NCBI GenBank assembly: GCA_002269645.1
Contig: NIVC01002489.1
Location: forward strand, 1 to 26,665
DNA length: 26,665 bases
From: Macrostomum lignano
Lineage: Eukaryota
Direction of reading: 5' to 3'
Shown: piece after piece, positions 12,771 to 15,473 of the stretch
Numbering within the stretch: the first letter of the stretch is position 1
Layout of the letters: each line of letters begins with the position of its first letter
Notes under the pieces: model-generated
Told to the model about the DNA's origin: nothing
Database searches by the model: none
The model's input: only the letters and a program-made list of their open reading frames with translations
Translations under genes and position numbers: made by a program

Positions 12771-15473
12771 CTAGGACTCAGTGGTCATGCCAGCCATGCC
12801 CGGCACTTCCTGGAGTGCAGCCCGCACAATGTCCTCAACCATTTTACTGGTTGATTCCACAGTGAGGACCTCCCCAGGCGGTCGGGACAGGGCCTGCACA
12901 ACCACTTGAGTCAGAGAGCGGGTGATCAGGGGCAACAGCATGCTCACCACCGACATAAAGTCACTAAGCTGCAGCTGCACCGCCTGGCCGGCATCAGCTG
13001 ACGGAGCAGTCGCATTGACATCAGACTCGGTCTCTGCCGCCGGAGCGCTCCTGGCATCATCGGTCACGATGACAAGCGGCCGGATCGCGGCGGGTACCGG
13101 CACCGTGCGCCTGCCTCGGCGGATCAGCCAGCCGCTGTCGGAGTCGTCGTCGGCGGCGGCGTCGTCGGTCTCACTTGACACTGGGGCAGCAGCGGCCGCA
13201 GCTTCCGCAGCTCGCGCCGCGGCTTTGGCCTCAGCAGCCGCTCTGGTCGCCTTGTCGTGCTCCGCCTTGGCGACGGTGCAGGCTCGACTGGTGGTTCGGT
13301 GCGAGCCGCCGCAGTTGGCGCAGACCGCTGGGCCCTCGTGCTGGCACTCCTTCCAGGAATGCTGGCCGCCGCAAATCCGGCAGCGCTGCTGCCCCCGACA
13401 CTGGCAGCGCGGTGGCCGAACTCCTGGCAGCGCTGGCATTGCAGAGCGCGGACCGGCTCGTCTGTGCGGCTGTCCTCGCAGTTGAACTTCAAGAAGTCGG
13501 TGCAGATGCCATCGCGGAGGCACTTCTCGTAGGTCATCGCCGACTTTGTGAAGATGCGCACGAACTGGGTTGCCTTCCCAGTCGCTCTGGCTCGGATTCT
13601 GTGGACGCTGACAATGTCCAGCTTGAGCGTGCGCGCAACAGGGTCGCGAAGTCAGCCTCCGAGAATGCGAGGGGCACCTCAGTAGCGACGAAGGTGCGTA
13701 CCGGCTGCTGCTGCACTCTGTCGGGCCCTGTTCTGTTGTCCAGCGGTCGGGCTCGGGCTGGACGGCGCTTTACGGGATGCTCGAGCAGCTTCTCCTCGCG
13801 CAGCGCGCCGCCCAGGAAGACGTTGTAGTCCCGCTCCGACGCTGGGAACACGAGATAGGCCGGCTGATTCGCCATCGGCGCAGTGTTGACGGCTCTAGCT
13901 TCGCCGGCAAAGTTGGTCTGCAGCCAGGCAACGAACTGCATCAGCTTGTTGGCCGCGTCCCGGTGCACCTCAAAAACGATCGGCGGGATGGCAGCCTGGG
14001 GCCTTCTGGGCGGCGCAGGGCGCGCCGCAACCTGCGCGTAGGGCCGCGCTGCCGCAGCCGCCTGCGCGCTTGTCGCCGAAGCCGCCGCCGCACCGGCCGG
14101 CCAGGAAGCCGCCGAAGCCGCCGCCGCACCGGACGCCGCGCCGCGACCTCCTCGCCTGCCTCGCTGGTGGCCGCCACGGCCGCGCCGACCCCGATCGCCT
14201 TCGCGGTCTCGCGTCGCCGTCGCCTGCCGCTCCTGGGGCCTGTCGTCGCCCCGGCCGCCCTGGTCGTCGTCGTGGCCGCCTTGGTCGTCGTCCCGACCGC
14301 CTTGGTCGTCGCCGAATGGGCCGCCGTTTAGCGGCTGGCTGTAGGTCGGGTCATCCGGCAGAGCTCGCTTGCGCCGCAGCTCCGGCTTGGTGACACGGAA
14401 TGTTAGCGAGATGCGGACGCCATTCTGAGAGTGGGCGGCGGGCACCTGGTGCTGCAGGCGTTTCTGGCAGTTTCCTGCCATCAGAATCAGCGAGCCTGGC
14501 AGCGTTGGAAAGCGGTGCGTCACGTTGCCGTCCCGACGGCGCAGCATGAACAGCCGCTCAGCACCGAAGGACACGGTCGCGATCGTCGGCCTGTCGCCGA
14601 GCTCATCCTCATCGTCCGAGTGCCAGGGAATCCGGTCTCCCGGCTCGGTGTAGAAGTTCACCAACACGGAGTTGAACTTCGGGACATCGAACTGGGTATC
14701 ATGGTAAATGAAGTCACGAATGTCTTCAATTACCTGATGCCAGTTAGATTTTCCTTCAGCTCAACCCCGCTGTAGGTGTACGACGGGCCGATCCAGTAGA
14801 CGCGGCGCTGCTCACTCGGACGATGCTGAAAGGCTTGAGGCAGCAGGTCGGTGATCAGGCGCTCGTAGACTTGGTCCGCGACCTCGCTCAGGAACTTGGG
14901 CGCATAGATGATGGTGCTGTCGCTAGCGTAGATCGTCTGCTGACAGTCAGTCAAGTCAGGCTCATCAGGGAAGATGATTTGACTGATGTCAGCGTCCAGT
15001 TGCTCGGCAGGGGGCTTTGGCAGCGTCGAGGCCTGGTCTGCAGCCGATTGCTGGCGCTCCTCAGACGTCGGCGCTGCCGCTGCCGCACTGAGCTCGCTGG
15101 ACTCGGCAGTTGGTGGCTCGGTGGTTGCTGCGGCCTCGTTGGATGGCAGGGCGCTTGTCTGGCCTGGCTCGTCGCAGTCGAGAGACATGCGCTGCTCTGC
15201 CTCTGCGCCTGCAGCCTCCGGCAGCTGCTCATTCTCTCGCAGGATCTCCTCTGCGTTGCGCAAGAGCTCGCCGGCCGGTGGGCTGATCGAGTGGCGGCCT
15301 TCCAGACTGCGTCGAGCTCGCATCTGGCCTGCTGGCGGCGGGCTCGCAGTCAATGGCTCAGCTGTCGGCGTCAGTCCAAGAAGCTGGCGACCGTAGGCTT
15401 CGTTCGGACGATACCGGTGCTCGAGAGAGGGCCGGCAGTCCATCTTTTTAGCGCTGGCGCGATTTGCAGCCAT
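12771..15473 (-). CDS. ORF1 of copy B (~900 aa): acidic low-complexity N-terminus, AlkB dioxygenase (~14395..14936), G/A/D/R-rich linker, gag-like region with three zinc knuckles
   Basis: Starts MAANRASAKKM. AlkB core FNSVLVNFY..PGDRIPWHSDDEDELG..PTIATVSFGAER...GSLILMAG..Q...HQVP....RISLTFR. Knuckles CQRCQEFGHRAAQC, CRICGGQHSWKEC, CANCGGSHRTTSRAC. Single-base deletions at different places in B and C complement each other to give one frame. Confidence 0.92.

What the first reader, a model, noticed from the sequence alone, without database searches (positions are those of the whole stretch)
14395..14936. AlkB nucleic-acid demethylase domain fused into a LINE ORF1
Seen in all three copies: an ALKBH2/3-type domain with intact Fe(II) ligands (WHSD, HQVP) and 2OG-binding arginines (RISLTFR), in frame between an acidic N-terminus and the gag knuckles. 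Established: AlkB enzymes oxidatively remove m1A/m3C from ssDNA and RNA, such marks block reverse transcriptases, and some plant RNA viruses carry AlkB domains. Inference: the element packages its own demethylase in the RNP to clean or unmark its RNA or cDNA, plausibly useful for a transcript that begins as a heavily modified snRNA. I do not know this as a standard LINE ORF1 domain.
Basis: partly seen in the sequence, partly recalled or inferred. Interest (0 to 1): 0.85.

Follow-up and report, generated by a model that had tools for sequence, protein, structure and literature searches.

The report
LINE coat protein carrying AlkB demethylase
A young jumping gene (LINE) of the flatworm Macrostomum lignano has a complete ALKBH3-like nucleic-acid demethylase domain built into its RNA-binding ORF1 protein; several related elements keep the same design, and I found no report of it for LINEs.

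Summary
The domain is real. On the minus strand, all three copies encode an AlkB-type 2OG/Fe(II) dioxygenase (Pfam PF13532, E 1e-21). The HxD...H iron ligands and the RxxxxxR 2OG arginines are present. The best sequence and fold matches are human ALKBH3, then ALKBH2.

Only copy C (20809-21399) reads through without interruption. The flagged copy B and copy A each carry a one-base frameshift inside the domain. No copy in the window has a fully open ORF1.

The fusion itself holds up. Uninterrupted ORF1s of 757-962 aa from other loci show the same order: variable N-terminus, AlkB, low-complexity linker, two RRMs, three CCHC knuckles. They sit directly upstream of endonuclease/RT ORF2s. The catalytic residues are invariant at 25-32% identity, and the domain evolves as slowly as the RRM/knuckle core.

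The most likely role is a demethylase riding on the element's RNP that removes RT-blocking methyl lesions (m1A/m3C type) from its own RNA or cDNA. This is inferred, not shown.

Sister AlkB-ORF1 families have no snRNA upstream.

The closest precedents are AlkB domains in plant RNA-virus replicases and in orchid Ty3/Gypsy elements. I judge this a new variant of a known kind.

The parts
20809..21399 (-). AlkB (ALKBH3-like) domain of copy C, the only uninterrupted one in the window
   Evidence: Pfam PF13532 E 1.3e-21. One frame, no stops, all five motifs present. AF2 model pLDDT 90.9. Best fold match is human ALKBH3.
14359..14948 (-). AlkB domain of copy B (contains the flagged 14395-14936). It is split by a one-base deletion near 14746.
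   Evidence: The same deletion is present in the paralogous locus L001.
1346..1925 (-). AlkB domain of copy A. The copy starts right at the domain and has a one-base deletion near 1521.
19229..22871 (-). ORF1 of copy C. ATG at 22871; interrupted by the MITE at codon 17 and by a one-base frameshift near 20029; stop at 19229.
12771..15473 (-). ORF1 of copy B. ATG at 15473 (MAANRASAKK...). Frameshifts near 14746 and 13633.
   Evidence: The start matches the annotated M. lignano protein P0002.
19904..20439 (-). Two RRM-like domains of ORF1 (copy C)
   Evidence: The AF2 model of the equivalent L001 segment shows two beta-alpha-beta-beta-alpha-beta units. Foldseek hits tandem-RRM proteins at E 4e-7 to 1e-5.
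19730..19891 (-). Three CCHC zinc knuckles of ORF1 (copy C)
   Evidence: The regular-expression scan finds three knuckles. Pfam zf-CCHC hit is weak, 16.9 bits, below the cut-off. The third knuckle and part of the second are invariant across the six aligned ORF1s (the first two knuckles are missing from one of them).
16360..19135 (-). ORF2 of copy C (AP-endonuclease plus reverse transcriptase), broken by frameshifts
   Evidence: The L001 counterpart is an intact 926-aa ORF.
9866..12684 (-). ORF2 of copy B. Endonuclease part 12136-12684; RT part 9866-12133.
   Evidence: RVT_1 E 1.1e-36. Homologous ORF2 in L002 has Exo_endo_phos_2 plus RVT_1.
23091..23206 (-). Complete U5 snRNA gene directly upstream of copy C's leader
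   Evidence: Rfam RF00020, 83.2 bits, E 3.7e-13, model positions 1-117.
15693..15760 (-). U5 nt 49-117 between the 3' end of copy C (15761) and the leader of copy B
   Evidence: 99.4% identical to 23091-23158. Sequence read.
9238..9308 (-). 3' part of a different U5 variant, joined to the 3' end of copy B (9309)
21879..22817 (.). 939-bp MITE inserted in codon 17 of copy C's ORF1. It is not part of the element.
   Evidence: Terminal inverted repeats TAGGGATTCCAA and 8-bp duplication CTCTTGAG. The site is empty in L001.

Best explanation
The window holds three copies, on the minus strand, of a young AP-endonuclease-type LINE of Macrostomum lignano. Its ORF1 protein is a Type I ORF1 (two RRMs followed by three CCHC knuckles). 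An ALKBH3-like AlkB dioxygenase domain has been added upstream of the RRMs, behind an acidic N-terminus and ahead of an Asp/Gly- and RGG-rich linker. The fusion is an inherited, selectively maintained feature of a group of retroelements.

Proposed mechanism (inferred). ORF1p binds its own transcript as it is translated, so the tethered Fe(II)/2-oxoglutarate dioxygenase is concentrated on the element's RNP. There it oxidatively removes N1-methyladenine / N3-methylcytosine-type methyl groups from the single-stranded RNA template, and possibly from the single-stranded cDNA. These lesions stall reverse transcriptases, so removing them would raise the yield of full-length cDNA during target-primed reverse transcription.

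Shown: domain identity, catalytic residues, fold, position in ORF1, conservation across families.

Inferred: enzymatic activity, substrate, action on the element's own nucleic acid, benefit to retrotransposition.

The confidence given covers the whole statement, mechanism included. For the shown part alone (a genuine, conserved AlkB domain inside ORF1) it is about 0.9.
For: Domain identity:
- Pfam PF13532 is above threshold.
- PDB sequence search: ALKBH3 E 4.7e-24, ALKBH2 E 2e-15, with HxD, H and R...R aligned.
- AF2 pLDDT 90.9. Foldseek best match is ALKBH3 bound to ssDNA (8jnk: TM 0.78 normalised to the query, 0.83 to the target; E 1.9e-17), then ALKBH2. ALKBH5, ALKBH8 and E. coli AlkB score far lower.

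Part of the element, not a neighbouring gene:
- The same domain sits at the same place in copies with different flanks.
- ORF1 starts 219 nt after the U5 sequence and runs through AlkB.

Family-wide architecture:
- The closest hits in 1.84 billion representatives include complete ORF1s. P0006 (962 aa), P0007 (757), P0012 (892) and P0015 (843) are uninterrupted and have AlkB plus three knuckles each. P0156 (861 aa, a partial UniRef protein model of M. lignano that lacks the region holding the first two knuckles) is collinear for the rest.
- They lie directly upstream of endonuclease/RT ORFs, for example the intact 948-aa ORF2 in L002.

Selection:
- H285, D287, H342, R354 and R360 are invariant among six ORF1s that are 25-32% identical.
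- dN of the AlkB domain is 0.23-0.30. The RRM/knuckle core is 0.27-0.34 and the linker 0.66-0.69.

ORF1 identity: tandem RRM fold plus knuckles.

Youth: copies are 98.4-99.4% identical, and L001 has an intact 926-aa ORF2.

Precedent: AlkB domains of plant RNA viruses repair m1A/m3C in RNA (PMC2553587). AlkB domains occur in many RNA-virus polyproteins.
Against: - No biochemical or expression data exist for this element.
- No copy in the window has an open full-length ORF1, so none of these copies need be active.
- dS is saturated, so dN/dS of about 0.1 is only indicative.
- The substrate is guessed from similarity to ALKBH3. AlkB-family specificities shift easily.
- The NJ tree does not place the domain inside the eukaryotic ALKBH3-like clade.
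- Whether flatworm LINE RNA carries m1A/m3C at all is unknown.
Confidence: 0.55

Rival explanations
1. Epitranscriptomic counter-defence. The domain erases an enzymatically written regulatory mark (m6A, m1A or similar) that the host places on transposon RNA to destabilise or silence it. This was proposed for the orchid Ty3/Gypsy AlkB.
For: The orchid Gypsy-encoded AlkB is an active m6A demethylase in vitro (PMC9289625). The catalytic residues are conserved here. The domain is tethered to an RNA-binding protein.
Against: The fold and sequence are ALKBH3/2-like. The m6A erasers are much poorer matches: ALKBH5 has TM 0.54-0.56, and FTO is absent from the 50 best matches. No data exist on m6A of transposon RNA in flatworms.
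Confidence: 0.2
2. DNA-directed role. The domain repairs methyl lesions in single-stranded DNA at the integration site or in the nascent cDNA. Alternatively it provides a host-beneficial repair activity that softens selection against the element.
For: The best structural matches are ALKBH3-ssDNA and ALKBH2-DNA complexes. Target-primed reverse transcription exposes single-stranded DNA (established knowledge).
Against: ORF1 proteins are RNA-binding and largely cytoplasmic before import (established knowledge for other LINEs). Nothing in the sequence distinguishes DNA from RNA preference.
Confidence: 0.1
3. Non-catalytic passenger. The domain serves only as an extra nucleic-acid-binding or folding module, or is a neutral hitch-hiker on its way to decay.
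For: The copies in the window carry frameshifts. No activity data exist.
Against: All five catalytic residues are invariant across ORF1 families that share only 25-32% identity. The dN of the domain is as low as that of the RRM/knuckle core. Uninterrupted versions exist in several families.
Confidence: 0.05
4. The domain exists to clean a transcript that begins as a modified U5 snRNA.
For: In this family the ORF1 start lies 219 nt downstream of U5 nt 49-117, and a full U5 gene precedes the array.
Against: Other AlkB-ORF1 families (L002, L003, L005-L012) and the Penelope-like element L004 have no snRNA in 0.5-2.1 kb of 5' flank. Known U5 modifications are not AlkB substrates (established knowledge).
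Confidence: 0.03
5. Artefact. A LINE landed in or next to a host AlkB gene, or the assembly is chimeric.
For: Many one-base indels suggest imperfect long-read consensus.
Against: The same junctions occur in three copies in the window and two more in L001. Independent uninterrupted ORFs have the same domain order in unrelated contigs. The host AlkB gene P0014 is a different protein, with C2H2 fingers plus AlkB, and never grouped with the element clade in 100 bootstraps.
Confidence: 0.01

Closest known systems
Human ALKBH3 (and ALKBH2), AlkB-family 2OG/Fe(II) dioxygenases
   Same: Pfam family, HxD...H triad and RxNLTFR 2OG arginines are shared. The predicted fold matches at TM 0.78 (normalised to the query) and 0.83 (to the target), with 32-33% identity.
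   Different: Here the domain is embedded in a 900-aa retrotransposon ORF1 protein. In an NJ tree it does not fall inside the eukaryotic ALKBH3-like clade that holds the host gene P0014. Activity is untested.
AlkB domains in replicase polyproteins of plant RNA viruses (Flexiviridae, Closteroviridae)
   Same: An AlkB domain is fused into a protein of an RNA-based replicon. The viral domains repair m1A/m3C in RNA (PMC2553587). The folds are similar.
   Different: Those sit in RNA-replicase polyproteins of RNA viruses. This one sits in the RNA-coating ORF1 of a reverse-transcribing nuclear element of an animal.
Orchid (Phalaenopsis) Ty3/Gypsy elements with an AlkB open reading frame (PMC9289625)
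   Same: A retrotransposon encodes an AlkB-family demethylase. That paper proposes it acts on the element's own RNA.
   Different: That is an LTR element with a separate extra ORF of the ALKBH5-like m6A-eraser type. Here a non-LTR element has an ALKBH3/2-type domain fused inside ORF1, and ALKBH5 structures match poorly.
Type I LINE ORF1 (RRM plus CCHC), and ORF1s with accessory modules such as esterase or PHD (PMC4120745)
   Same: Tandem RRMs sit immediately upstream of CCHC knuckles, and the ORF lies upstream of an endonuclease/RT ORF2. An accessory module is added to ORF1.
   Different: The accessory module is an AlkB dioxygenase, which is not in that catalogue.

Membership tests
AlkB-type 2OG/Fe(II) dioxygenase (Pfam PF13532) | Profile match above the curated threshold | tested here: met
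   78.1 bits against a cut-off of 31.2, E 1.3e-21.
AlkB-type 2OG/Fe(II) dioxygenase (Pfam PF13532) | HxD...H iron-binding triad | tested here: met
   WHSDDE and LQHQVP align with the ALKBH3 motifs. H and D are invariant in 149 homologues and in six ORF1s.
AlkB-type 2OG/Fe(II) dioxygenase (Pfam PF13532) | Two 2-oxoglutarate-binding arginines (RxxxxxR) | tested here: met
   RISLTFR aligns with RVNLTFR of ALKBH3. R354 and R360 are invariant.
AlkB-type 2OG/Fe(II) dioxygenase (Pfam PF13532) | Double-stranded beta-helix core with the N-terminal nucleotide-recognition extension | tested here: met
   AF2 pLDDT 90.9. About 200 aligned residues to ALKBH3 and ALKBH2, TM 0.75-0.86. This is a prediction, not a solved structure.
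AlkB-type 2OG/Fe(II) dioxygenase (Pfam PF13532) | Fe(II)/2OG-dependent oxidative demethylation | not testable with these tools
   Needs a recombinant enzyme assay.
ALKBH3 orthologue group | Groups phylogenetically with eukaryotic ALKBH3 | tested here: inconclusive
   Best PDB sequence and fold hits are ALKBH3. The NJ tree puts the element clade apart from the clade holding host P0014 and Asterias P0144. Supports are low: 37/100 for the element clade and 16/100 for the eukaryote clade.
Type I LINE ORF1 (Khazina and Weichenrieder scheme, as summarised in PMC4120745) | At least one RRM immediately upstream of CCHC zinc knuckles | tested here: met
   Two RRM-like units are predicted. Foldseek gives tandem-RRM hits at E 4e-7. 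Three CX2CX4HX4-6C knuckles are present.
Type I LINE ORF1 (Khazina and Weichenrieder scheme, as summarised in PMC4120745) | Encoded directly upstream of an endonuclease plus reverse-transcriptase ORF2 of a multi-copy element | tested here: met
   Window copies B and C. L001 has an intact 926-aa ORF2. L002 and L005 also qualify. There are three copies in the window.
Named LINE clade (Jockey, CR1, L2 and others) | Placement in a reverse-transcriptase phylogeny with reference elements | not tested
   No reference RT set was at hand. The homologue search returned only unnamed or uninformative hits.
Orchid-type retrotransposon AlkB (ALKBH5-like m6A eraser) | Closest similarity to ALKBH5/ALKBH9-10-type demethylases | tested here: not met
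   ALKBH5 structures rank about 32nd or lower, with TM 0.54-0.56 and 16-20% identity.

The most novel reading that the evidence does not exclude
AlkB-bearing ORF1 proteins may mark a previously unrecognised strategy shared by unrelated retroelements: APE-type LINEs and at least one Penelope-like element, alongside plant RNA viruses and orchid Gypsy elements. Under this reading, methyl marks or lesions on template RNA are a significant natural barrier, or a host defence, against reverse transcription in animals. The elements answer it by carrying their own eraser in the RNP.
Probability: 0.3. Interest if true: 0.85.

Novelty: new variant of a known kind. Interest (0 to 1): 0.7.

Why it matters
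LINE ORF1 proteins are usually seen as RNA-binding chaperones. The only enzymatic accessory module catalogued for them is an esterase of unknown role. A conserved nucleic-acid demethylase in ORF1 would be the first ORF1 accessory enzyme with a clearly predictable chemistry.

It also gives a direct test of whether RNA base methylation limits retrotransposition. M. lignano is a suitable animal for that test, since it can be made transgenic (PMC5730564).

The finding links three separate observations into one theme of mobile RNA replicons carrying their own erasers: AlkB in plant RNA viruses, AlkB in orchid LTR elements, and this case.

There is also a practical point. AlkB-like genes counted in flatworm proteomes are partly transposon ORF1s. 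Several UniProt 'Fe2OG dioxygenase domain-containing proteins' of M. lignano belong to this group.

Tried and rejected
- Word-index homologue searches. The whole 596-aa ORF returned only self-hits because low-complexity words filled the candidate list. The AlkB domain alone gave two weak metagenomic hits. The exhaustive representative scan was needed.
- Simple majority consensus of the three copies. It still left ORF1 in two frames. Continuity needs the base present only in copy C at 20082.
- Organism of the SRA runs carrying the intact relatives (SRR31628392-437 and SRR19430222). I could not identify it. There is no nucleotide similarity to the window, no literature hit on the accessions, and the M. 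lignano heat-stress paper uses another archive number. A search with the L002 ORF2 gave no named near-identical protein.
- LINE clade assignment. Not achieved.
- Origin of the domain. The NJ tree with 100 bootstraps is weakly supported. The nearest non-element relative, P0003, lies on a gene-dense metagenomic contig with HMG-box and RING genes, and the source organism is unclear. Capture from the host gene P0014 is not supported (0/100).
- dN/dS. Synonymous sites are saturated (dS above 1.5 or undefined), so only the dN comparison between regions is used.
- Literature searches for AlkB together with non-LTR, ORF1, Jockey, Penelope-like or Repbase found no description of this architecture. One lead, the tubeworm ALKBH2 paper, was irrelevant. 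Subscription-only journals were not covered.
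Full report
**What is at the coordinates**

The element lies on the minus strand. Translating 14395-14936(-) gives the sequence TIYASDSTIIYAPKF...YWIGPSYTYSGVELKENL, then a stop. The rest (NSVLVNFY...WHSDDE...LQHQVP...RISLTFR) continues in another frame.

A self-comparison shows three copies of one repeat:
- Copy C covers about 15761-21878 and resumes beyond an inserted MITE.
- Copy B covers 9309-15760 and is 99.4% identical to C.
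- Copy A covers 1-1925 and is 98.4-98.6% identical to B and C. It is cut by the window edge.

Pfam finds 2OG-FeII_Oxy_2 (PF13532) in copy C's 596-aa ORF at E 1.3e-21, and in the distal part of copy B at E 1.7e-16. All five signature motifs are encoded in all three copies. Only copy C has them in one stop-free frame. B lacks a base near 14746 and A lacks one near 1521.

**Which AlkB**

A sequence search of the PDB puts human ALKBH3 first (E 4.7e-24) and ALKBH2 second (E 2e-15). The iron ligands (WHSDDE, LQHQVP) and the 2OG arginines (RISLTFR) align to WHSDDE, WQHRVP and RVNLTFR.

An AlphaFold2 model built on 149 homologues has mean pLDDT 90.9. Foldseek against the PDB ranks ALKBH3-ssDNA complexes first (E 1.9e-17; TM 0.78 normalised to the query and 0.83 to the target), then ALKBH2. 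ALKBH6, ALKBH8, ALKBH5 and E. coli AlkB are clearly poorer.

**It belongs to ORF1 of a LINE**

- ORF1 begins at ATG 15473 in copy B (MAANRASAKK...). This matches the annotated Macrostomum lignano protein P0002 (BOX15_Mlig027759g7), which identifies the organism.
- Downstream of AlkB come an Asp/Gly-rich and RGG-rich linker, a region predicted to fold as two RRMs, three CCHC knuckles and a conserved C-terminal helix.
- Next comes an ORF2 with an AP-type endonuclease and a reverse transcriptase.
- This is a Type I ORF1 as summarised in PMC4120745, with an added N-terminal AlkB module.

**State of the copies**

No copy in the window has an open ORF1.
- Between AlkB and the knuckles, B and A lack a base that C has at 20082, and C lacks a base at about 20029.
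- C also has a 939-bp MITE in codon 17.
- A 901-aa continuous ORF1 results only if, at each indel, a state seen in at least one copy is used.

A 99.6% identical paralogous or allelic locus, L001 (GCA_002269645.1, contig NIVC01002892.1), lacks the MITE. Its ORF1 has a single one-base indel and its ORF2 is an intact 926 aa.

The window and L001 differ by 21 substitutions and 23 one-base indels over 11.1 kb. That ratio suggests some frameshifts are long-read consensus errors. This cannot be settled here.

**The fusion is a family trait**

An exhaustive HMMER scan of 1.84 billion representative proteins with the domain gave 6732 hits. Many of the closest non-self hits are long proteins.
- P0006 (962 aa), P0007 (757), P0012 (892) and P0015 (843) are uninterrupted ORFs. 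They have AlkB, a linker, the RRM region and three knuckles, in the same order as here.
- P0005, P0008, P0010/P0156 and P0011 are further M. lignano proteins of the same kind.
- The uninterrupted ones sit directly upstream of endonuclease/RT ORFs. One example is the intact 948-aa ORF2 in the 9-kb contig L002.
- The SRA runs that carry them (SRR31628392-437) could not be assigned to an organism.
- In L004 (SRR19430222), a 1012-aa protein with a related AlkB domain precedes an ORF with RT and GIY-YIG motifs. That is the layout of a Penelope-like element, although both Pfam hits are below threshold.

**Evidence of constraint**

- Among six ORF1s that are 25-32% identical overall, H285, D287, H342, R354 and R360 are invariant.
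- Between paired families, dN in the AlkB domain is 0.23-0.30. That is as low as in the RRM/knuckle core (0.27-0.34) and far below the linker (0.66-0.69). dS is saturated.
- The domain has therefore been kept under purifying selection while the elements diverged.

**Origin**

In an NJ tree the ten element-borne domains cluster together. They sit apart from a eukaryotic ALKBH3-like group that contains the host gene P0014 (C2H2 fingers plus AlkB) and a starfish protein. Support is weak: 37/100 for the element clade, and 0/100 for element plus host gene. The nearest other relatives are unnamed metagenomic proteins. The origin is unresolved. A recent capture from the host gene is not supported.

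**How it most likely works**

By analogy with ALKBH3 and with viral AlkB domains that repair m1A and m3C in RNA (PMC2553587), the domain is probably an active demethylase. ORF1p coats the element's own RNA, so the enzyme would be held on that RNA. It would remove methyl lesions that stop reverse transcriptase, from the RNA and perhaps from the single-stranded cDNA. This is inference; nothing here measures activity.

Alternatives are:
- erasure of a regulatory mark used by the host against transposon RNA, as proposed for the orchid Ty3/Gypsy AlkB (PMC9289625). That protein is ALKBH5-like, unlike this one;
- a DNA-directed role;
- a non-catalytic role, which the invariant catalytic residues make unlikely.

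**The U5 idea**

The family in the window is tied to U5 snRNA genes.
- A complete U5 gene (23206-23091) is followed by a 219-nt leader and copy C.
- Copy C ends in ...TTTTAACAAC at 15761 and is joined to U5 nt 49-117.
- The same leader and copy B follow. Copy B ends identically at 9309, joined to the 3' part of a different U5 variant.

It does not explain the AlkB domain. The other AlkB-ORF1 families have no snRNA in their 5' flanks. The known modifications of U5 are not AlkB substrates (established knowledge).

**Novelty**

Full-text searches found AlkB in plant RNA viruses and in orchid LTR retrotransposons. They found nothing on AlkB in LINE or Penelope-like ORF1s. The large survey of Jockey-superfamily ORF1 modules does not contain the word. 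The search did not cover subscription-only journals.

I rate this a new variant of a known kind. Element-encoded AlkB is known. Its fusion into a non-LTR ORF1, and the ALKBH3-like type, appear new.

Noticed in passing
window 23206..9238 (minus strand): Head-to-tail array tied to U5 snRNA genes. The order is: full U5 (23206-23091), 219-nt leader, copy C, then U5 nt 49-117 (15760-15693), the same leader, copy B, then the 3' part of a different U5 variant (9308-9238). Both 3' junctions are identical over 27 nt. This looks like a LINE specific for U5 loop 1 that carries U5 nt 49-117 at its own 5' end and so rebuilds an intact U5 gene upstream. I found no report of a U5-specific LINE.
   Followed up: partly
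window 21879..22817: A 939-bp MITE with terminal inverted repeats TAGGGATTCCAA, many AATCCCGGGATT palindromes and an 8-bp target duplication CTCTTGAG. It interrupts codon 17 of copy C's ORF1. The site is empty in L001.
   Followed up: partly
window 9150..9215 (minus strand): A degenerate copy of the 'element 3' end plus U5' junction (CCTCATTTTAACAATAATTTCCATGGTGAG). It may be the remnant of an older, heavily truncated insertion into another U5 copy.
   Followed up: no
window 1926..2020 and 1925: Copy A is not simply 5'-truncated. About 95 bp of diverged leader-like sequence is fused directly to the start of the AlkB domain, with an in-frame TAG just upstream. Seven substitutions cluster in the first 80 bp of the copy.
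   Followed up: partly
L004 (SRR19430222), 2120..7398: A 1012-aa protein with an AlkB domain (aa 530-665) lies upstream of an ORF with reverse-transcriptase and GIY-YIG motifs. This would be a Penelope-like element whose first ORF also carries AlkB. The Pfam hits to RVT_1 and GIY-YIG are below threshold.
   Followed up: partly
window 10783..21883 versus L001 10043..21146: 21 substitutions against 23 one-base indels over 11.1 kb. The excess of single-base indels suggests long-read consensus errors, so some frameshifts in the copies may not be real.
   Followed up: partly
window 23825..24573, 25437..26272, 3589..3962, 2022..2383: Satellite arrays flank the elements: a 16-bp unit x47, a 19-bp unit x44, a 30-bp unit x13, and 100/163-bp units. 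The last of these are shared between 2.0-2.9 kb and 7.5-9.0 kb.
   Followed up: no
protein P0014 (M. lignano BOX15_Mlig015948g2; not in the window): The host's own ALKBH3-like gene carries N-terminal C2H2 zinc fingers. Several UniProt 'Fe2OG dioxygenase domain-containing proteins' of M. lignano (P0005, P0008, P0010, P0156) are in fact transposon ORF1s.
   Followed up: partly
window 20440..20808 (copy C, minus strand): The linker between AlkB and the RRMs has (D)DDQGG(R/H) repeats followed by an RGG/RGR box and an alanine-rich tract. It may be an extra RNA-binding or phase-separating segment. It evolves fast between families.
   Followed up: no
window 9809..10321 and 16261..16773 (plus strand): A 170-aa ATG-initiated ORF antisense to the 3' end of ORF2 is kept open in copies B and C, and in L001. 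It is probably fortuitous given 99% identity.
   Followed up: no
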